A stretch of 60,587 nucleotides of DNA, counting the filler, from Dugesia japonica (taxonomy: Eukaryota): NCBI GenBank assembly GCA_001938525.1. It is 4 parts of 4 records of this genome, joined end to end, with 100 filler letters (N's around TTAATTAATTAA, not from the genome) between each part and the next. Parts side by side here need not be neighbours in the genome. Positions count along the whole stretch, not along the records: positions 37,947 to 49,905 come from MQRL01613032.1; 3 more parts are not named here. One strand, given 5' to 3'. Below the pieces are notes generated by a model. It saw only the letters and a list, made by a program, of their open reading frames with translations. It searched no databases and was not told where the DNA came from. The position numbers and the translations under genes are program-made. How positions within the stretch are numbered: the first letter of the stretch is position 1; every line of letters starts with the position of its first letter. Shown piece after piece: positions 37,947 to 49,905 of the stretch.

Positions 37947-38932
37947 AATCATATTGTGGTTTAACGGGACACTGGATTGCTTCCGATTGGAAACTTATTT
38001 CAGTAACATTAGGTTGCCTAGTTGTTGAAGAACGGCATACGGCTGATACAGTTTTTATGAAGAGTTTGCTGCAAAATGGAGTATTGCAGACAAAATATGC
38101 TGTATTGTAACTGAAAGTGCTTTAAATATGGTCGTTGCTATTGGGCAAACGAATTACAATCACATACTATGTATCGCACACTGTCTGCAGCTTAGCATAT
38201 TAGCGGGTTTAAAGGCAGCTGACTCATGACCGCTTTTGGCAAAATGTCGAAAATTGGTTGGGCATTTCAAACACAGCTTGGCTAACACATCCTTACTAAA
38301 AAGTAGCCATGCCAATCTCTCTCGGCAGACAGATAATGACGTGTTCCATAAATTGGATGGAGTAGTCGGTGCAGAGGTTGAACTGATGCGGTATCAAGAA
38401 AAACCTTCAATACCAGAAACAGAAGATCCACTCATTTGGTAGAAGTTAAATCAACATCAGTTTCCTGTTCTCAGTAGTTTTGTGCAGACAATTCTTTTTG
38501 TACCGGCTACATGTGTTCCCAGCGAAAAACCTTTTAGTTCATTTGAATACATAGTTAATAAGATGCGATCTTGTCTGCTTCCAAAAAATGTCAAAGCTCT
38601 GGTTTGTCTACGTGACTGGTTAAACTGATTACTTATAATTCCATAATAAAAAATGAATTTATGGTCTTCAGACGAATGTAAATTTTAAAAAGTCAATATA
38701 AATTTTACTTTTTTTAGTTTGATGTTTTTGAATTTTTGAATTAAAACGTGTGTAAAATAATCAGTCATTTAAGGCACTGCTACAATTTAATTTTACTAAG
38801 TTGTCGTGCTATCGCATGTGATGACTTTTATGAGTGCATTATGTATGTATAATTAATCGAAATTAATCGATTAATCGATTAAAAAAATTTTCGATTAATT
38901 GAACAAGAAAATTTTAATCAGTACCAGCCCTA
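37947..38932 (+). mobile_element. hAT (Ac/ZBED-like) transposon, internally deleted, with 3' terminus
   Basis: HW..DWKL..HTA..IVTESALNM..CIAHCLQL..CRKLVGHFKHS fused to the dimerisation domain DPLIW*K..FPVLS..VPATCVPSEKPFS..RSCLLP (coding to 38628). End CCAGCCCTA at 38932 with aattaatcga subterminal repeats. Confidence 0.92.
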
Positions 38933-39389
38933 ATATATATATATATATATGTGTGTGTATTGTTCTATGAGCATTAATAATAGTAATTATAGCAATAACA
39001 GTAAAAAATTGGATTACTAAAAGAATTTTTAAATTATTAAAGAATCAAATAAAATTTATATAGTAGGTTAGTATAAAGAAAANNNNNNNNNNNNNNNNNN
39101 NNNNNNNNNNNNNNNNNNNNNNNNNNNNNNNNTATATATATATGTGTGTGTGTGTGTGTGTATTGTTCTATGAGCATTAATAATAGTAATTATAGCAATA
39201 CCAGTAAAAACTTGGATTACTAAAAGAATTTTTAAATTATTAAAGAATCAAATAAAATTTATATAGTAGGTTAGTATAAAGAAAAATTAAAAAAATTTAT
39301 ACTGAAATTAAACAAAATGAAATTAAAAATATAACAATTAGAATATTAAATTAAACATAAAGAAAATCACTATTGAAAGAATTACAAAA

Positions 39390-40212
39390 GTCCATACAGA
39401 TTCTATGTAATGAAGGTGCAGCAAATGCTGTCTGACGCTACCAAGATCCAAAAAATTGCCCGATGTAAATTGCTATTGTCTTCATAAAACATAAAGCTAG
39501 TGGACGTTTAAAGTTTTTTTCCGACGAGAATATTTTTACCATAGATACCAAGGTGAACAGAAGGAATGACTGGTCGCTTACCCACAATCCAAAAGATGTT
39601 CCTGTAGTAGGTCGTACAAAATTTCCAACAAATGTGCATGTTCTAAGCAATGTTTCCAGTGAAGGTGATTTCATGCCATCATCTTTCTTTTCAAAAGGAG
39701 AAACAATTACAAAGGATTTCTATCTTCAGGTTTTAATATCGACAGTACATCCTTGGATAACAACTTTAGCTGCTGGAAGGTCATACGTATTTCAGCTCTT
39801 ATACAAGCCTCTTATGAAAAAAATGGTTATCAGAAAATTTGATAATGTTTTGGTCCAGGGAAATATGGCCTTCAAATAGTCCAGATTTAAATCCTCTAGA
39901 CTATTTTGTCTGTGGCGTTTTGGAAAGGGTTGCTAATAAGTCTAGACATGCCAATGTTGCATCCTTACAAGTAACTATTGAGGCAGCATTCGCAGATTTG
40001 TACAGAGAGCACCTAAAGAGAGCATGTTCGCGCTTACGAGAGCGAATAGAGGCTGTAATAGCTGCTAAAGGTAGCTACATTGAATGAGAATACATNNNNN
40101 NNNNNNNNNNNNNNNNNNNNNNNNNNNNNNNNNNNNNNNNNNNNNNNNNNNNNNNNNNNNNNNNNNNNNNNNNNNNNNNNNNATTTTGTCCGGATTTGGC
40201 TGGCTCACCCTG
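39390..40212 (+). mobile_element. maT (DD37D-type) Tc1/mariner element, 5'-truncated
   Basis: FFSDENIFT..NRRND..YVFQ..WPSNSPDLNPLDY..ACSRLRERIEAVIAAKGSYIE; terminus CACCCTG|TA at 40212. Confidence 0.9.
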
Positions 40213-41664
40213 TATATACATATATGATTACGATTTTCAATATTATCGGGAAAATAAATAAAATTATATTTTTTAAGTAAAGGTATTAAAGAAATTTTAA
40301 AAATTATTTTTCTTAATTGTATTTTAAGTTAATCAACTTTCTGCATTTAATTTTCATAAAATTGTTTTATTTTCATTCAAATACATTAATTTATTTTATT
40401 ACAATGGATCATACAATATTTAATATTATAAAAATTCTTTTTGACAATTTTTTATCAACTTTAGAAATGTTTTTCTTTGATGAAGTCTGGTTTTAACATG
40501 ATAAAATTTTTGTTTTTTTATATCTGATATGTAATTAATAATTGTTTATTCTGAATAATTAGATTCTTTATGAAGTGACATATTGATACTTGAATGAACT
40601 CTAAAATTATTATTTCTTACTAAATCTAGTAATATTCGTCATTTTAAAACTAATTTATTTGCTTAATAAAACTCCTCTAGATTTTATCATTAAGTGTTTT
40701 ATTTAATCTTTCAGTAAATACTGATTTGATTCATTGTATAATATAAAATAATATGTTATATTTTTAAAATAGTTAATTTTATTATCTAATTTTTTTACTT
40801 GAATCAAAATAATTTTGATTTAAATCATTATGGTATTTTAATTTTCATTACTAAATTAATTAATGCTCTTTGTATATTGTAACTCGCTGTTGAATTTTCT
40901 ATATTAATTAAACCATGGGTTAAATTTACATTTATATTTATATACATTTATATGCTGATCACTCTATTCACTACAGTATTCAATACGCCACTACTAAATT
41001 TGGCCATATTTCTGATTAGGAATGTACTCAACTTATGTACTACCAAGTTTTAATCTCATTGATTTAAATGAGTTTGGGATGCAATTATTTTCTTATAGAA
41101 TTCTATATTTATCTGTTCTAGCACATTCCATTTTAATTGGAAAGAATAATCTTGAATTTAACATATTCAGAGAATTACTAGATTGTAATGAATAAAATAA
41201 AATATCAACACATTAGATTGGCCAAGAATTTTGATATTTCTTATTTTGATATATGTTAAAAGTTTAAATTATTAATCAAGTCTAAGCTAATAGACATTTT
41301 TAATTTATAGAAATTATTGATTTGTAATATATGTTTAATGTTGAAGTTCAGTGATCGAGGTTATTCATTCAAAGTTCACTATAAAATTCAATCATGATTC
41401 AGTTAAAAATCATTATTTTCATACTTACTCAAAATTTAAAATTTCCAAAGTTTCTTTTTTCATCATTTTCAACATAGTTTATTTATTTTGATGTGATCAA
41501 ATTATGTCNATTATACATATAATATTTACACAATATTAACTTAGCATATGTTAGCAAAAGGTAAAGACTATATATATATATATAATTTTATTATATTAAT
41601 TTATTTTTTTATCTATTTTGTTTAAATATAGTCATAAATGTATAAAAAATAATTTAAAAATTAC

Positions 41665-42892
41665 CATAACACTGATAACATTTCATTATATATTTTACCA
41701 CAATATTTCCACATTTAAAACAAATGTTTGATTTATCAGTAGCTGCTATGCGAATTAATCTGTCTGTACTTGAGATAGTTGAAGCATTACTAAAAAAAAA
41801 TTTTATTTCTAATTCTTTTAAATCGTTTTGTTCAGGTACAACTTTGCAAATGATATCCATGGGAATATTTAGCATAAATATTTTATAATCTGGTTCAATG
41901 ACAATATCGAATTTAGTAGTATCTGAAAATAGATAAACTATTTTAAATCCATTTGAAATTTTAGAAAACATAAATTTATTTCTCTCATTTTCGGTTTCAA
42001 CATAACAATATTAAATTATCCAATTAAAATTCAATAAAATAAAACAAAATAAGACCATTGTCGAAAATTTGGATCTCAAACAAGGAATAAAAGAAAACCT
42101 TTTATAATTATTGAATCAATAAAAAATAGTTTGAGAACTTGCATTGAAGAATATTTTTTTAATTTGTTCTTGTAATTATTTATATCTGTATTTGTTTGTA
42201 TTTGTATTAATTTGTATTTGTATTAATTGGTATTTGTATTCCTATTTGTATTTATATTTGTTTGAATTTGTATTAATTTGAATTTGTATTAATTTGTATT
42301 TGTATTAATTGGAATTTGTATTGGTATTTGTTGGTACTTCTATTAATTTCCATTTATATTAAATCCGTTGCTGTTTACAAAAAACAAAATACGAATTTAT
42401 ATAAAACATAAATTTATTAATAATATTTTTCAAACATATTTTTAGAATCATCCTTTTCTGAACACAACAGACTTCAACGTTAATTATTTTTAATTAACAA
42501 TTAATGTATTTTTTAATTGATAACGCGCGGATTTTCTACACAAAAAGTGCATTAAAATGAAAAAAGCGATAGCATTCATCCAATTCGCAAGAAGTGTAAG
42601 ATTTATTAAACTTGCGTTATCAAAACATTTTCATTATAATAGACTAAATCCTCAATGCACGTAAGATGTGTTTTGTCGATTAGAAAATAAGGTAATTACT
42701 TTATTAAATACAAATTAAAAGTAAACAATGTATTTATTTACAATCTATAAAATATCTGAAATTCACTATTAAATTAATCCTAGATATAGTGACTTGCTTA
42801 TTAATTAATTATAAACTTCTGAAATAGGTAAACACTGATTGAATGTATCAATGTATCAATGTATCAATGTATACGATATTGAGACTATTTGC

Positions 42893-42931
<39 letters not shown>

Positions 42932-45900
42932 TAATAATAATGCTAATAATATAACTATTATTATGATTATAATTTATGTAATATTCACAACAAATTTGTA
43001 AAATTATTTTAGAAATGATCAAATATAAATGAATTTTTAGAACCTTTTCTAATATATATCACGTTTCTTTAAATCAATAAATATAAACTCACCGAAATAA
43101 TCATAACATTTCAATTTTATTTCTACTAAAATATTTCCACATGTGAAACATATTCGTCCTTTATCTTTACCATCAATGACAATCAATCTCGGACCTGATT
43201 TCGTATAGGTACTGTTATTCCAAATGAAATCTATTTCACGCACCATTTGAATTAAACTATTCGGTTGAACATCACATGTAATTTGCAATGTAACATTAGC
43301 ATAATAATATATTGGTTTTTCCGGTAGAATTCGAATTGTAATATTTGTATCTAAAAAATTAAAGCAAAAAAAAACGATTTTTAAAAATAATAATTTTGAT
43401 AATATTAAAGAATTTACCAAAGTAATTGTAACATTTTGTAACGCTTTTAAGAATTGGACTAACACAAATAAAACAAATATTTCCATCATTTGTACCCGGT
43501 ATTATTATATGGTATTTATTTATTATTTGTAATTTTGTTGAATTTCCAGAAAACGTAATATCGTCCACCATGTTTTTATCAATGATTTCATTCGGATCTA
43601 TTATGCACTTGATATCCATATTCTTATTTGGTAAATATATATCAATATTATCTGGTGTTATCGTCAGAGTTACCGGTTTTTCTGATATAAAAATAGAATT
43701 ATAAGTTATATTTTAAATCATATCATAAATTTGTAATAATAAATACAATTTCTGCATTAATATTTGTTAAACTTGACATTTGATCGTATTTTTATACTTT
43801 GAATGAAATTGAAAAATCCTTTGATCCAAATAACGTTTATTTACAAGTTTTTGTTAGCAAATTCGCAACTTTGACAAAAATAAATCCCGGAAGAAGACCA
43901 TCGTTAAAAATTCGTATTGCTAAAAAACAACTTAAGAAACGTTATTTTGATCTAAAATTTTTATTAGTAGAAATTTTATTGAATTTGATATTAGTAGATG
44001 GATAGTGGCGGATGTAGCCAGCACACATGCAGCGAACCCCCCCNCTTTGATCCAAATAACGTTTATTTACAAGTTTTTGTTAGCAATTCGCAACTTTGAC
44101 AAAAATAAATCCCGGAAGAAGACTATCGTTTAAAATTCGTATTGCTAAAAAAAATCTTAAAAAAACATTATTTTGATCTAAAATTTTTATTAGTAGAAAT
44201 TTTATTGAATTTGATATTAAAACTTTATATTCAGTTGGTAAATAGGAGAATATTCATGACAATAAGCATGATATTTATGCAGTAATAACAAATGTAAAAT
44301 TAAATTCAAAAAGTAAACTATATAGATAATAAACGAAATGTAGATTATAGTAAATCCACGGACAAAGTGTGGCTCTTGAGATACATGTAGCTCTTTGCAA
44401 ATTTTTTTATGGCTCAATTAAAATTTTTAAAGTTACAACTAAAAATTTTTAATTTTACTTATAATTGGTTGAGGGAAAAAATAGTTCTTTTCTCTTTTTT
44501 CCCGTTCAGGAAATAAAATGGATGAATTGTTTCTTTTTATTTAATAATAGTAATATTTAATTGTGTTTTTTATTTAATAAATTTAATAATAAAAATTAAA
44601 AACTTTACAGAAAAAAATTGTTTCTTTTAATATTAGCTATAATAATAATAATAAAATTAAATTCAAATTCATGTTAAATCGAGAACATATATATATTGTT
44701 CCATATATATATATAATTATATATACATTATAATTTATCAATAAAATTTTTTGTACCTTTAAGTTATTTTTGTTTCAATCTATAAACGGTTTATAAATTA
44801 GTTCAGATAGATTTGAATTTATCCCTAACAAAGGTATATATTATAAAATATNNNNNNNNNNNNNNNNNNNNNNNNNNNNNNNNNNNNNNNNNNNNNNNNN
44901 NGGGGGGGGGTTCGCTGCATGTGTGCTGGCTACATCCGCCACTATCCATCTACTGATATTAAAACTATATATTCAGTTGGTAAATAGGAGAATATTCATG
45001 ACATTAAGCATGATATTTATGCAGTAATAACAAATGTAAAATTAAATTCAAAAAGTAAACCATATAGATTATAAACGAAATGTAGATTATAGTAAATCCA
45101 TGGACAAAGTGTGACTCTTGAGACACATGTCGCTCTTTGCAAATTTTTTATGGCTCAATTATAATCTTTAAAGTTACAACTAAAAATTTTTACTTTTACA
45201 CATAATTGGTTGACGGAAAAAATAGTTCTTTTCTCTTTTTTCCCGTTCAGGAAATAAAATGCATGAATTGTTTCTTTTTATTTAATAATAGTGTTATATC
45301 TAATTGTGTTTTTTATTTAATAAATTTCATAATAAAAATTAAAAACTTTACGGAAAAATTTGTTTCTTTTAATATTAGCTATAATAATAATAATAAAATT
45401 AAATTCCGATTCATGTTAAATTTTATATATATATATATATACATTATAATCTATCAATAAAATTTTTTGTACCTTTAAGTTATTTTGTTTCAATCTATAA
45501 ACGGTTTATAAATTAGTTCAGATAGATTTGAATTTATCCCTAACAAAGATATATATTATAAAATATATAAACGTTATGTTTACTAGAGTTATTGTTGAAA
45601 CTTTAACTAAATTTTATTAAAAACATATAATATCAAATAAAAAAAAATAATGAATAAATTTCTCACCATAACGATCATAACATTTAGTAAATTCTTTAAT
45701 TTGCGGATTTCCACAATTAAAACAAATTTTATTTACAGTCGCTTTTTTAACAAGTATTATCCATAATGATAAACTCTGGAAATTTTCACTAAGACTTTTT
45801 AGAGACATGTTGAATTGAGGTTCTTGATAATGATTGGGAAATATTGAACAAATAACTTGCATTTCAACATTTGGTAAATAAATAGAATAATTTGGAATGA

Positions 45901-48900
45901 TATTTATAGTTAAATTTCTTGGATCTTGAAAAACAGAAAATTAAAANNNNNNNCTTTATTTATTTATTTATTTTAATTCACTATATATTAATCTTATTTT
46001 AATATATAATTTTTTATTAATATATATTATAAAAATTATTAAATGTTAATTGTAAAATAATTTTAAAATATTAATTGAAACTGCTTTAATTTATATTATA
46101 TTCATTCATTATTTAACTTTAATGAAACAATTGATAATTTCGCCAACTGATTTATTTGAAAAAATGTATATTGTTAGATGAGTTTGTAGCACTTGATTTG
46201 TTTCCAGAAATTAAGTTATCGGTATATAAACATTATTTAAATGATATTTTCGTGGTGTTTAAGAATCAATCCAATGTAGAATCTTATCTTATTTATATGA
46301 ATTCCTTAATCGGTAATATAAAATTNACCACTGAAATTGAACGTAATGGTAAATTTACTTTTCTTGATTTACTACAAGACCGCCAATCTGATCATTATGA
46401 AACAGGAATATTGCACAAACCATTATATTGGCTTGTAAAGTTCAAAAAGCAACTAACACGATTTATTAAAAAACCAATTTAAAAATTATTGTGAACACTT
46501 ATTAAAATATTGTAACATTTTAAAATGTTGTTTTTAAAAAATTTGTTTAACTATCCTATTTTAATAATTTAATTTTCGATCTTTATTTGAAATCAATTAA
46601 TAAAACTTTTAATGAATTTTTAGATGAAAGCCGAAGAAATTCAAATTTTTGTCATTGTCTATTATATGAGTATAGAAAAAGATCAACTGCCTCAAATGCC
46701 TATCGAAACATATTATTTGTTTATTTTGATTCAGGTTTATCACTGAATAAATGCCAAAAATGGTTCCAAAAGTTCAAGGAAGGGGATTATGATCTATCAG
46801 AAAGTAGAGGAGAAAGTTATTCAAATTTTGATGACGATGCCTTTTGGCTCAAATCGAAGAAGAACCAAGGCATACAACTTGAGAATTAAAAGATTGCCTA
46901 CAGGTATCTCACACCACTATTGCCACTCATCTTTATTAGTTAGGCAAAGTAAGTAAAGAAGGGCCATGGGTTCCTCATTGCTTAAGTGAAAGCAGCAAAT
47001 AGAACAGGTTGATCATTTTCTCTTCTCTCCAGATTCTAGAAAGAAAACTCTTTAAAATGAATTGTGATAGGCGATGAAAAGTGAGTGTTACGTTAATATA
47101 AAAAGAAAGAAGCAATGGCTAACACCAAAGAAGGACTTCATCCCTAACGGATAATGATGTCTGTTTGATGGAATTATTACAGTGTAATATATTATGAGTT
47201 ATTGCAAAAGAAACATGCCTATTACAGCAACAATTTAATGTGATCAAATAGAAAAACTCGAATCTGAATTGAAAAAAGCAAGACCACGATCGATTAACAG
47301 AAAGAATGTTATTATCCAACATGCGTGTAATACATCATACTTCAAAACTGACACTGCAAAAAATTAGAGATTTAGAATGGGAACTTCTTCTTCATACAGC
47401 ATACTCACCTGATAACGCTTCTTCAGATTATCACTTTTTCAGGTCTCTACAAAATTACCTGAGTGGTAAAGAATTTTCAATAGAGGACGATATAAAATTG
47501 CCGTGGAAACTTTCTTTACATCAAAGTGTTCTTCTTTTTATGAGGATAGGATAATGAATTTGCCTTTAAGATGGCAAGGTGTCATAGACAATAATAGAAA
47601 TTATTTCGATTAAACTTGTTATTTTTCCTTTGTCAAAATTGATTTTTTTTAAAATCAATTATATTAGTTGCCTTTTGAACTATACAAGCCAATAAATTTA
47701 ATATGATTAAAGGATTAACTCAAAATTCTTGGACTAACTTATTCGAAATTGTGTAGAAATATTCACAATCTGCCGTCTTTTTTAAAAAAAATGGATATTC
47801 TAAATCAATTTTCGAAAGATTTACTAAGAAAAAATTGATAGAATTGTTCTTAACATTAATAATAATCTAAATAATGAAAAGTTTTATCTAATAAAATTGA
47901 TTAAGTTAGATATTTTTAAGCATTCCTTACCTTGAGGACTTTTAACCAAGACGTCTTATGGATTGGTTTCTAATTTTATTTATAAATATGGGTGTAATGT
48001 GAAAGAGACTTCTCGTTAATTCTGTTAAATATTTCAGAAACATAGTCGATTAGGTAGTCGTAGTAATATTATAGAACATAATATTTAGTGTGAATCATTT
48101 ATAAATATTTATAAATTTAACATTTTGTGCAGAAACGTTAGAGATTACTGTGAGAGAATTAAACGCGAAGAATTGATTATTAGATCTTATGATCCAAAAA
48201 AGTAATGTTCAACCTGGTCTTTTAAAATCTTTACTGAATGTATTATTTATTTGTATGTATATATATTTATATGTATGTATATTTATTTAATTTTAATTTC
48301 ATTGAGACTGTTAATCAATTGTATAATGCAGACCTTTAGTATAATATACCTTACTCTAAGTTTAAAATAGTATTTTTAAAATAATTAAAAATAAAGTTTA
48401 TTTTGAAATTATATATTTTAAAAAAAGTCGATCATAACTAGATAAATTAAAAAAATTAAAGGACAAATTAAATTTTAATATTTACTTGAAAATTAGAAAA
48501 TTGATTGTTGACTATTGAAGAAGTATTTTTTAAAAGAAATTTTGTGTTAAATTAATGCGTTATTTTAAAGAGTTTAAAAACTTTGAACCTTCACGAAAAT
48601 TTTCTTGGAAGGTTACTTGGAAAANAGAATTCATCAAAAATCGAAATCCAAAGTGTTCTGTAATTCGAAAAACCAATTCTTGAATTAGAAATTCATGGAA
48701 TGCTTTATCATCGGAAAAAATAAGAAATTATATTAAAACTGTCGGATTTTTATCTGATATTAGTGGTAAAATATATCAAACATTATTTAATGAATTATAT
48801 TTATTACGAAAATTGTTTGATTTAATAGCTGAAAAAATTCTATATACATAGAATATTTTTTAGAGTTATTTAAGTTATTACTTGAAAATTTTAATTAATT

Positions 48901-49905
48901 CAAGTTTTAATTTATTTTTAATTTATTTTATTTTATTTATTTATATTTTAAAATATGAAATATTTAAATTAATGTTGAATGTACAAAAATGTGAAATATT
49001 TTTGCAGAATATTAAAACAAAAACTTTTCGAAGTAATTAATAAGCTTTTTTAGATTGTGAGTATGTTTTGAGAAGTGAGTTGAAATTTTTGTGCTTTGGT
49101 TGGAAGTTATTTTTGTAAAAAATTGAAAGTCAAAAATTAATTAAGAAAAATATTAAAGTAAATTAAATTAAATTTTTATACAAAAATTATGAATAGTTAA
49201 AAATTAATTTGAATATCAAAATTTAATATTTTTGTTTTTGATAATAATTCGAAATTTCGACTTTGTCTTCGTCAGGAATGGACTTTTTCAATTGATTTTT
49301 CGTAAACTCCTGACGAATACAAAGTCGAAAAATATAATTATTATCGAAAACTAAAAGAAAACAAAAAAATAGTTTTTGATCGAAGCTTTTATTTCAATGA
49401 ATTACAATATTTATTATAATAATTTTACAAATAATATTTTATTAAAAATAACTCAATAAATACAATTTCTTAAAACCCACCAACATAAATGTAACACCGG
49501 AAATCAATTGTTAACATAACATGTCCACATGAGAAACAAATAGTTCCTTTGTCTATACCGGAAACTGTGATTTTACGATCGGTAGCTTTGAATGTACTAT
49601 TATTTATTATGAAATCAATTGCTTTAAAAACGTTAAGAAGTTTATCGGGAGATACTTGACAACTTACAATCATTGTTTTATTGAAATAATAGAAATCTTT
49701 ATCATTTGGACTTATGAATATTTTGTAAGGCTCACCTAAAATCTTCGATTAATTTGTTGTAAATATTTAGATAAAATCATTAACTGAATGGATCATAACA
49801 CTTGGTAACATTAGCAACTAATTGACTACCACAAATGAAACAAATGTTTCCATGACTTCCTTGAGGAATTTCAATGTCTCTTGAACTTTTCTTAATTAAA
49901 TTTGA
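41665..49905 (-). CDS. Spliced host gene (or gene cluster) of tandem ~86-aa four-cysteine modules, probably extracellular
   Basis: Symmetric phase-1 GT-AG exons: 49785-49905 (partial), 49481-49735, 45667-45924, 43418-43681, 43093-43350, 41665-41922. All are open and end ICFxC(G/V)x8-9CY. Confidence 0.85.
42180..42360. repeat. Low-complexity tandem repeat (tttgtattaa/tttgta units)
   Basis: Direct observation. Confidence 0.8.
42892..42930. repeat. (ATT)n microsatellite
   Basis: Direct observation. Confidence 0.9.
43993..44954. mobile_element. Both ends of a Maverick-type insertion (interior unassembled, filled by the empty allele)
   Basis: Identical ~50-bp TIR ends at 43993-44043 and 44902-44954; 6-bp TSD GATATT at 43987-43992 and 44955-44960; single GATATT empty site at 44213-44218. 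Confidence 0.88.
46150..48240 (+). mobile_element. Penelope-like retroelement fragment (RT C-terminus plus GIY-YIG endonuclease), interrupted by mariner
   Basis: YKHYLNDIFVVF..NIKFTTEIERNGKFTFLDL..HKP before the mariner; KNGY..IPYL..KETSR..SNIIEH..FNILC..EELII...P.NVQ after it. Confidence 0.8.
46428..47692 (+). mobile_element. Full-length degenerate mariner (DD34D)
   Basis: TIRs TTGGCTTGTAAAGTTCAAAAAGCAACTA / TAGTTGCCTTTTGAACTATACAAGCCAA with TA flanks, ~1.27 kb; motifs WFQKFKEG, WVPHCL, GDEK, YSPDNASSDYHFF. Confidence 0.95.
49247..49279 (-). ncRNA. Minimal type I hammerhead ribozyme candidate
   Basis: Minus strand AUUC-CUGACGA-A-GAC(AAA)GUC-GAAA-UUUC-GAAU: stem I AUUC/GAAU, intact core, stem II, UH cleavage site, vestigial stem III. 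Confidence 0.65.
49305..49403 (+). ncRNA. Second, inverted, partly degenerate hammerhead repeat copy
   Basis: CTGACGA-a-tacaaagtc-GAAA at 49310-49330 followed by the family tail ttattatc..ttttgatcgaagcttttatttcaatgaa. Confidence 0.45.

What the first reader, a model, noticed from the sequence alone, without database searches (positions are those of the whole stretch)
41665..49905. Unrecognised tandem four-cysteine exon module, one module per phase-1 exon
Seen: six diverged but alignable exons (255-264 bp when complete), all open despite TE-filled introns. Consensus: i.I.P....y..n..m.i.C.v.P...(30-35 aa)...g.ICFxCG.(7-8).kCY.yy. They have alternating hydrophobic beta-strand patterns and several N-x-S/T sequons. 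Known: symmetric phase 1-1 exons typify shuffled extracellular modules such as Ig, FN3 and CUB. Inference: a divergent Ig-like or new disulfide-bonded beta-sandwich in a lineage-specific surface or secreted protein, possibly involved in adhesion or recognition.
Basis: partly seen in the sequence, partly recalled or inferred. Interest (0 to 1): 0.7.

Follow-up and report, generated by a model that had tools for sequence, protein, structure and literature searches.

The report
Undescribed four-cysteine Ig-like exon array
Six neighbouring exons of an AT-rich eukaryotic gene each encode one copy of a very divergent immunoglobulin-like domain with a second, unusual disulfide; no domain database recognises it, but its fold is a familiar one.

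Summary
On the minus strand lie five complete exons (255, 258, 264, 258, 258 nt) and one exon cut by the piece's edge. All are phase 1-1 with GT-AG borders, and each encodes one module of about 85 aa. A profile built only from related metagenome sequences finds these six exons (E 2e-29 to 7e-11) and nothing else in the piece. Pfam and PDB sequence searches find nothing. A profile search of 1.84 billion proteins finds only 11 short, unnamed ORFs, all on small AT-rich metagenome contigs that carry the same tandem one-module-per-exon layout.

AlphaFold2 models of two modules (pLDDT 90-91) are seven-strand sandwiches. Their Foldseek matches are almost all immunoglobulin-superfamily domains, but weak ones (best E 1.5e-3, TM up to 0.66).

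Two cysteines are invariant (strands B and F, the classic Ig pair). The other two (strands F and G) are lost together in one relative, which suggests a second disulfide. A glycosylation sequon is kept in 15 of 20 modules.

Best reading: part of a gene for a secreted or surface glycoprotein built as a rod of divergent C2/I-type Ig-like domains. Its function is unknown, and I found no transcript, signal peptide or membrane anchor. The assembly gap lies inside an intronic tandem repeat and touches no exon. Modest interest.

The parts
49785..49905 (-). Exon A: the 3' part of a module (strands E-G, ICFICG...KCY). Its 5' part is cut off by the piece's edge. Donor A|GTTAAT.
   Evidence: E 6.7e-11 with the independent profile
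49736..49784 (-). Intron A-B, 49 nt, GT..AG, 18% GC
49481..49735 (-). Exon B, 255 nt, phase 1-1, one whole module
   Evidence: E 3.5e-25
45925..49480 (-). Intron B-C, 3556 nt. It holds a decayed mariner on the + strand (HTH_48 at 46551-46886) and a 7-N run at 45947-45953, 23 nt upstream of exon C.
45667..45924 (-). Exon C, 258 nt, phase 1-1. The most divergent window module; it lacks the conserved sequon.
   Evidence: E 1e-19
43682..45666 (-). Intron C-D, 1985 nt. Made of a ~740-nt tandem duplication with the assembly gap (44852-44901) at the junction, a 225-nt tandem duplication and 60-nt inverted repeats.
43418..43681 (-). Exon D, 264 nt, phase 1-1, one whole module (folded, pLDDT 91.5)
   Evidence: (E 2.3e-29)
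43351..43417 (-). Intron D-E, 67 nt, GTAAAT..TTTTAG, 12% GC
43093..43350 (-). Exon E, 258 nt, phase 1-1, one whole module (folded, pLDDT 90.4)
   Evidence: E 4.9e-25
41923..43092 (-). Intron E-F, 1170 nt, GTGAGT..TTTCAG
41665..41922 (-). Exon F, 258 nt, phase 1-1, the last module in the piece. It is followed by the donor-like G|GTAATT, and by a stop three codons on if read through.
   Evidence: E 3.4e-20

Best explanation
This is a stretch of one eukaryotic gene on the minus strand. The gene runs on beyond the piece at its 5' end and possibly also at its 3' end. It encodes a chain of at least six very divergent immunoglobulin-like domains, one per phase 1-1 exon.

Each module of about 85 residues folds as a seven-strand sandwich (A, B, C, C', E, F, G; C2/I-type). 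The classic cysteine pair joins strand B (C25) to strand F (C70) across the sandwich. A second, family-specific pair probably staples strand F (C67) to strand G (C81).

The modules follow each other with only about 4-5 linker residues, which would give a beads-on-a-string rod. The paired cysteines and a glycosylation sequon kept at the C-C' turn point to the secretory pathway. The product is therefore most likely a secreted or membrane-anchored glycoprotein of the cell-adhesion or recognition type.

Because every exon is phase 1-1, the array can grow, shrink or be alternatively spliced without breaking the reading frame. A relative shows a three-module unit repeated in tandem.

Shown: the exon structure, the family, the predicted fold, the cysteine pattern and purifying selection in a relative. 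Inferred: the disulfide pairing, the extracellular location and the function.
For: Exons and phases.

The family is real and independent of the window. A profile from metagenome modules alone finds the six exons. Relatives on contigs L001-L009 and L019-L026 have the same tandem layout, with introns of about 30-60 nt.

Fold: AlphaFold2 gives pLDDT 90.4, pTM 0.80 and pLDDT 91.5, pTM 0.79. The Foldseek PDB top-50 lists are dominated by Ig-superfamily domains: titin, ICAM-3 D1, Robo1 Ig5, perlecan IG3, NCAM, nectin-like, PVR, LAG-3, CD4.

Cysteines: C25 and C70 are invariant in 20 modules, and C67 and C81 are present in at least 90%. The one module without C67 also lacks C81 and keeps C25 and C70. 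The DSSP strand limits (F 66-72, G 76-84) are compatible with residue 67 lying opposite residue 81 in the hairpin.

Sequon at the C-C' turn: 15 of 20 modules.

Selection: between two samples of one relative, exons differ by 1.5% and flanks plus intron by 6.4%, Fisher p = 7.6e-4.

Array growth: two independent assemblies give the same circular 1052-nt contig carrying three modules.
Against: No transcript, signal peptide, transmembrane segment or GPI signal is available. The 5' end lies outside the piece, and nothing recognisable follows exon F.

Foldseek scores are weak (no match at E <= 1e-3; TMq mostly 0.45-0.58). The assignment is to the Ig-like fold, not to a named Ig family.

No Pfam Ig model matches. 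The C-strand tryptophan typical of Ig domains is not conserved.

The models rest on only 19-20 sequences.
Confidence: 0.72

Rival explanations
1. The four cysteines bind a zinc ion (a CxxC knuckle plus two distant Cys), so the module is an intracellular metal-binding domain and not a disulfide-bonded extracellular one.
For: The CFxCG motif draws the only weak sequence hits, all to zinc-binding proteins: YhfH, and eL40, the RBM10 zinc finger and Fur. All have E > 0.04.
Against: AlphaFold2 places CFxC inside a beta strand (66-72), so C67 and C70 should point to opposite faces. One natural module has lost C67 and C81 together while keeping C25 and C70. That fits two separate pairs, not one four-ligand site. 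A glycosylation sequon is conserved in 15 of 20 modules. Foldseek hits are Ig domains.
Confidence: 0.06
2. The array is a decaying pseudogene or a set of unused exon relics in a TE-rich region, no longer producing a protein.
For: Long introns are invaded by transposons and repeats. There is no transcript evidence. No annotated full-length protein of this family exists among 1.84 billion representatives.
Against: All five complete exons are open over 84-87 codons in DNA of about 20-30% GC. The only other open frames of that length in the piece are TE ORFs. All ten internal splice sites are GT/AG with phase kept. All four cysteines and the core hydrophobic pattern are kept in every window module. 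Exons are under constraint in a relative.
Confidence: 0.12
3. A beta-sandwich of another superfamily (FN3, bacterial Big_2-like, cadherin-like or PKD-like) that Foldseek merely ranks next to Ig domains.
For: Foldseek E-values are weak. A few non-IgSF sandwiches appear in the lists: lambda gpV C-terminal domain, CbhA FN3-like, Big_2 and SraP.
Against: The B-F cysteine pair with an aromatic-x-Cys in strand F is the Ig hallmark. Most of the top 50 hits for both models are animal IgSF domains. One domain per phase 1-1 exon fits IgSF genes.
Confidence: 0.1

Closest known systems
C2-set / I-set immunoglobulin domains of cell-adhesion molecules (ICAM-3 D1 1t0p_B, nectin-like and PVR membrane-proximal domains 4fqp_A/3j9f_9, Robo1 Ig5, perlecan IG3, NCAM, titin I-set)
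   Same: A predicted sandwich of about 85-90 residues and seven strands. A B-F cysteine pair about 45 residues apart. An aromatic-x-Cys in strand F. Tandem arrays with short linkers. One domain per phase 1-1 exon. Foldseek probabilities are 0.9-1.0 and TMq is 0.45-0.66.
   Different: No Ig-clan Pfam model matches. There is no conserved C-strand Trp. The Gly of the D-x-G-x-Y-x-C motif sits two residues further from the Cys. There is a second conserved pair, C67 (strand F, three residues before the canonical Cys) with C81 (strand G). Sequence identity to hits is 6-18%.
ICAM-1/VCAM-1 type first domains with an extra disulfide (from my own knowledge, not tested here)
   Same: Ig domains of adhesion molecules that carry two disulfides in place of one.
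   Different: There the extra bond links strands B and F again. Here the extra pair is inferred to link the neighbouring strands F and G.
Brachionus mate-recognition protein repeats (MMR-A/B; PMC2746195)
   Same: Tandem repeats of 87-92 codons in a secreted surface glycoprotein of an AT-rich invertebrate, with no database homologues. Repeat units are kept near-identical in tandem, as in the 1052-nt unit of L001/L002.
   Different: MMR genes have no introns. Their repeats abut head to tail, are predicted helical and lack N-x-T sequons. The window modules are separated by introns, are all-beta, and carry four cysteines and N-x-S/T sites. Only the repeat length matches; this is not the same family.

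Membership tests
Immunoglobulin-like beta-sandwich (IgSF, C2/I-type) | Seven to nine strands in two sheets with Greek-key topology | tested here: met
   AlphaFold2 models of modules E and D have strands A, B, C, C', E, F, G. Foldseek top hits are IgSF domains. This is a prediction, not an experiment.
Immunoglobulin-like beta-sandwich (IgSF, C2/I-type) | Conserved cysteine in strand B and in strand F, about 40-70 residues apart | tested here: met
   C25 and C70 are invariant in 20 modules and 45 residues apart. They lie in the predicted strands 21-28 and 66-72.
Immunoglobulin-like beta-sandwich (IgSF, C2/I-type) | Conserved tryptophan in strand C packing on the disulfide | tested here: not met
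   The strand C consensus is I-x-F. Trp occurs in only a few modules.
Immunoglobulin-like beta-sandwich (IgSF, C2/I-type) | D-x-G-x-Y-x-C motif leading into strand F | tested here: inconclusive
   The consensus is G-x-I-C-F-x-C. The aromatic-x-Cys is present, but the Gly sits two residues further upstream than in the canonical motif.
Pfam Ig clan families (I-set, ig, Ig_2, Ig_3, C2-set, V-set) | Score above the family's gathering threshold | tested here: not met
   None of the 20 modules matches. The only Ig-related line is VEGFR1-3_N_Ig-like at 14.4 bits against a cut-off of 35.4.
Zinc ribbon / CxxC metal-binding modules | Two CxxC-type knuckles, or four ligands meeting at one site | tested here: not met
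   There is only one CxxC, and it lies inside a predicted strand. C67 and C81 are lost as a pair while C25 and C70 stay. Metal binding itself cannot be tested here.
Sushi/CCP, FN3, CUB (other phase 1-1 extracellular modules) | Match to the family profile and its cysteine spacing | tested here: not met
   No Pfam hit at E <= 1 for any module. The cysteine spacing of 25/67/70/81 does not fit the roughly 60-aa, four-Cys pattern of Sushi (my own knowledge).
Brachionus MMR mate-recognition repeats | Intronless head-to-tail repeats of 87-92 codons, predicted helical | tested here: not met
   The paper's description (PMC2746195) contrasts with the intron-separated all-beta modules here. MMR sequences themselves were not available for alignment.

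The most novel reading that the evidence does not exclude
The modules define a lineage-restricted receptor or ligand family used for self/non-self, mate or pathogen recognition. Its arrays diversify by exon-unit duplication and homogenisation: divergent modules in the window gene, and a near-identical three-module unit repeated in tandem in a relative. The F-G disulfide would stiffen an exposed binding face.
Probability: 0.15. Interest if true: 0.55.

Novelty: new variant of a known kind. Interest (0 to 1): 0.33.

Why it matters
If confirmed, it adds a distinct Ig-like sequence family that current domain libraries miss. Its marks are the CxxC in strand F and a second disulfide to strand G. It would also show that genomes of little-studied AT-rich invertebrates, and eukaryotic DNA hidden in metagenomes, hold multi-domain surface proteins invisible to profile-based annotation. 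A Pfam-style model built from the 20 modules would let such genes be annotated. The gain is for annotation and for the natural history of the Ig fold. It is not a new principle.

Tried and rejected
1. Pfam on each exon and on all 20 modules: only sub-threshold noise.

2. PDB sequence search with the profiles: only E > 0.1 hits, driven by CxxC.

3. The search for homologous proteins with alignment A2: only four proteins, all already known. The tool is limited by word sharing and by length.

5. A degenerate DNA pattern for ICFxCG-8-[KR]CY on metagenome contigs: nine loci (L010-L018). None matches the module profile convincingly (best E 0.005 over 25 residues). I treated them as chance matches and did not use them further.

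6. Search for more modules or decayed exons in the piece: none. The two 8-bit hits at 45041-44976 and 44299-44234 are copies of the intronic repeat.

7. Search for a terminal exon or membrane anchor below exon F: nothing convincing. That region is TE debris.

8. Tree of the 20 modules: unresolved star. Window modules do not group together, so no order of duplication can be given.

9. Brachionus mate-recognition repeat lead: rejected on gene structure and predicted secondary structure.

10. Sample accessions searched in the paper library: no hit. The source organisms of the relatives, and of the window, remain unidentified.

Each exon was handled by reference.
Full report
**What is in the sequence.** The piece (37947-49905) has about 20% GC and no long open frames, apart from transposon remnants and a set of frames on the minus strand that share a C-[FV]-x-C-G motif. 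Reading the minus strand around each motif gives six modules.

The exon borders are exact:
- A: 49905->49785, a 3' part only, cut by the piece's edge
- B: 49735->49481, 255 nt
- C: 45924->45667, 258 nt
- D: 43681->43418, 264 nt
- E: 43350->43093, 258 nt
- F: 41922->41665, 258 nt

Each complete exon follows an AG and precedes a GT. Each begins with two bases that finish a codon and ends with one extra base (G, or A in exon A). All are therefore phase 1-1, and the split codon reads Asp, Glu or Ser. Introns are 49, 3556, 1985, 67 and 1170 nt, with 12-24% GC against 25-31% in the exons.

**Is it more than chance?** The five complete modules and the partial one align at 24-42% identity, with I..ICFxC and CY invariant. 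The stronger test is independent of the window. A profile built only from 15 modules found on unrelated metagenome contigs hits these six exons at E 2.3e-29 to 6.7e-11 among 530 six-frame fragments of the piece. The next best fragment has E 0.37. No further module or decayed copy is present in the introns or below exon F.

**The assembly gap.** The N run at 44852-44901 lies in intron C-D, 766 nt from exon C and 1171 nt from exon D. It sits at the junction of two tandem copies of an intronic repeat (44212-44851 and 44954-45566, spacing about 742 nt, 78-96% identity). Next to it are 60-nt inverted repeats (43984-44043 and 44904-44963) and a 225-nt tandem duplication. No module frame runs into the gap, so continuity or frame across it does not bear on the six exons. 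Its length is only estimated, so an extra repeat copy or even an extra exon inside it cannot be excluded. I did not try to fill it. A 7-N run (45947-45953) lies 23 nt upstream of exon C, inside the intron.

**Relatives.** A profile of the six modules searched against 1.84 billion representative proteins gave only 11 hits at E <= 1e-3 (7 at E <= 1e-10). All are 71-164 aa, unnamed and without Pfam domains. They are exon-sized ORFs called on short (<1.7 kb), AT-rich (24-35% GC) contigs from ENA, Logan and JGI metagenome assemblies.

Six-frame scanning of those contigs shows one to four modules per contig, on one strand, separated by about 30-60 nt. In L003/L004 the exons are 270 nt, phase 1-1, with a 46-nt GT-AG intron. 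The trailing Gly in many of these ORFs is the GT donor read through; it is not part of the protein.

No long, multi-module or annotated protein was found. The family is therefore absent from annotated proteomes in that library, and I have no transcript evidence. The source organisms are unknown; sample accessions are not in the paper library. Exon-per-domain architecture, the splice signals and the mariner and hAT debris suggest an AT-rich animal. That is inference.

**Known families by sequence.** Pfam gives nothing above noise for any of 20 modules. The only Ig-related line is VEGFR1-3_N_Ig-like at 14.4 bits against a cut-off of 35.4. PDB sequence searches with the 6- and 20-sequence profiles give only E > 0.1.

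**Fold.** With the 20-module alignment A3, AlphaFold2 models module E at mean pLDDT 90.4 and pTM 0.80, with strands at 4-8, 21-28, 40-44, 48-51, 55-58, 66-72 and 76-84. Module D, with alignment A5, gives pLDDT 91.5 and pTM 0.79 with the same order of strands.

Foldseek against the PDB returns, for both models, lists made almost wholly of immunoglobulin-superfamily domains: titin, ICAM-3 D1, Robo1 Ig5, perlecan IG3, NCAM, NEGR1, nectin-like and PVR, LAG-3, CD4, VEGFR2. A few bacterial or phage Ig-like domains also appear. Probabilities are 0.9-1.0, but the scores are weak: best E 1.5e-3 and 4.4e-3, TMq 0.43-0.66, identity 6-18%. The fold is Ig-like, of the short C2/I type (A, B, C, C', E, F, G). 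No named Ig family can be assigned.

**Cysteines and sugar.** Across 20 modules, C25 (middle of strand B) and C70 (strand F, preceded by Phe-x) are invariant. This is the canonical Ig pair, 45 residues apart.

C67 (strand F) and C81 (strand G) are present in 19 of 20 modules. The one module without C67 (L026:82-330) also lacks C81 and keeps C25 and C70. With F at 66-72 and G at 76-84, the strand limits are compatible with residue 67 lying opposite residue 81 in the hairpin. I therefore infer a second, cross-strand disulfide on the outer face of the G-F-C sheet. I could not measure distances, because model coordinates are not exposed.

The paired loss argues against a single Cys4 zinc site. That is the main alternative suggested by the weak CxxC-driven hits to zinc proteins.

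An N-x-S/T sequon at the C-C' turn (consensus NNST) is kept in 15 of 20 modules. Together, the paired cysteines and the sequon point to the secretory pathway.

**Selection and array dynamics.** Two samples of one relative (L003, L004) differ at 8 of 540 exon positions (4 synonymous, 4 not) and at 13 of 202 intron or flank positions (1.5% against 6.4%, Fisher p = 7.6e-4). The exons are therefore constrained there.

In another relative, two independent assemblies (L001 from ENA, L002 from Logan) each close on themselves with a period of 1052 nt carrying three modules. That indicates a three-exon unit repeated in tandem with near-identical copies.

In the window gene, by contrast, the modules are old and divergent. 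A tree of all 20 modules is an unresolved star in which window modules do not group.

**Most likely mechanism.** The locus is part of a gene for a secreted or membrane-anchored glycoprotein made of a rod of Ig-like domains joined by linkers of about 4-5 residues. Phase 1-1 exons allow duplication, loss or skipping of modules without frame loss. The role (adhesion, recognition or matrix) is inferred only by analogy with multi-Ig ectodomains.

Rivals, with my confidence in each:
- a zinc-binding intracellular module, 0.06
- a decaying pseudogene, 0.12; this is opposed by intact frames, intact splice sites and intact cysteines
- a sandwich of another superfamily, 0.10

**A lead that failed.** The 87-92-codon tandem repeats of the Brachionus mate-recognition protein have a similar length and also lack database homologues. 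Those genes, however, are intronless, their repeats are predicted helical, and they lack N-x-T sites (PMC2746195). This is not the same family.

**Limits.** The AlphaFold2 alignments are shallow (19-20 sequences). The last column of some metagenome rows carries the intron-derived Gly. The metagenome pattern scan gave only chance loci (L010-L018), which were set aside.

**Verdict.** It is an undescribed, lineage-restricted variant of the Ig-like domain with a characteristic second cysteine pair. Expression, location and function are unknown. Interest is modest (0.33).

Noticed in passing
window 46551-47551 (+), inside intron B-C: Decayed mariner-type transposon. The ORF piece at 46551-46886 matches the Mos1 HTH_48 domain (E 1.6e-16). 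The piece at 47273-47551 reads like the C-terminal part of a mariner transposase but has no Pfam hit. The frames are broken by stops.
   Followed up: partly
window 37947-38625 (+): hAT transposase remnant. The piece at 38443-38625 matches the hAT C-terminal dimerisation domain (E 1.3e-13). The region has about 40% GC, twice that of its surroundings.
   Followed up: partly
window 39469-40084 (+): Two overlapping open pieces (136 and 89 aa) that look like the end of a Tc1/mariner DDE transposase. The only Pfam signal is a weak DDE_3 hit (E 0.16). They end at the N run 40096-40182.
   Followed up: partly
window 43819-45566: Intron C-D is a nest of repeats: a ~740-nt tandem duplication with the assembly gap exactly at the junction, a 225-nt tandem duplication (43819-44043 / 44045-44219), and 60-nt, 97% complementary inverted repeats (43984-44043 / 44904-44963). 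This is possibly a TIR element plus an assembly break in a repeat.
   Followed up: partly
window 46138-46479 (+): A 114-aa open piece in intron B-C whose sequence (…YLNDIFVVF…FLDLL…) recalls a reverse-transcriptase core. There is no Pfam hit, so this rests on memory only.
   Followed up: partly
window 38930-39240 (+), either side of N run 39083-39132: The same short sequence (translating …VYCSMSINNSNYSN.SK.LDY…) occurs on both sides of the N run, so a second assembly gap also sits inside a direct repeat.
   Followed up: no
L001:1-1107 and L002:1-1082: Two independent metagenome assemblies give contigs whose first 55 and 30 nt respectively equal their last. The period is 1052 nt and the contig carries three modules. 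This is a three-exon unit in near-identical tandem copies (or a circle) in a relative of the window's organism.
   Followed up: partly
L003:560-1300 vs L004:290-1030: The same two-module locus, 99% identical, appears in a JGI sample and in at least six ENA assemblies at about 2.5x coverage. One eukaryotic species carrying this family recurs across metagenome studies. Its identity is unknown.
   Followed up: partly
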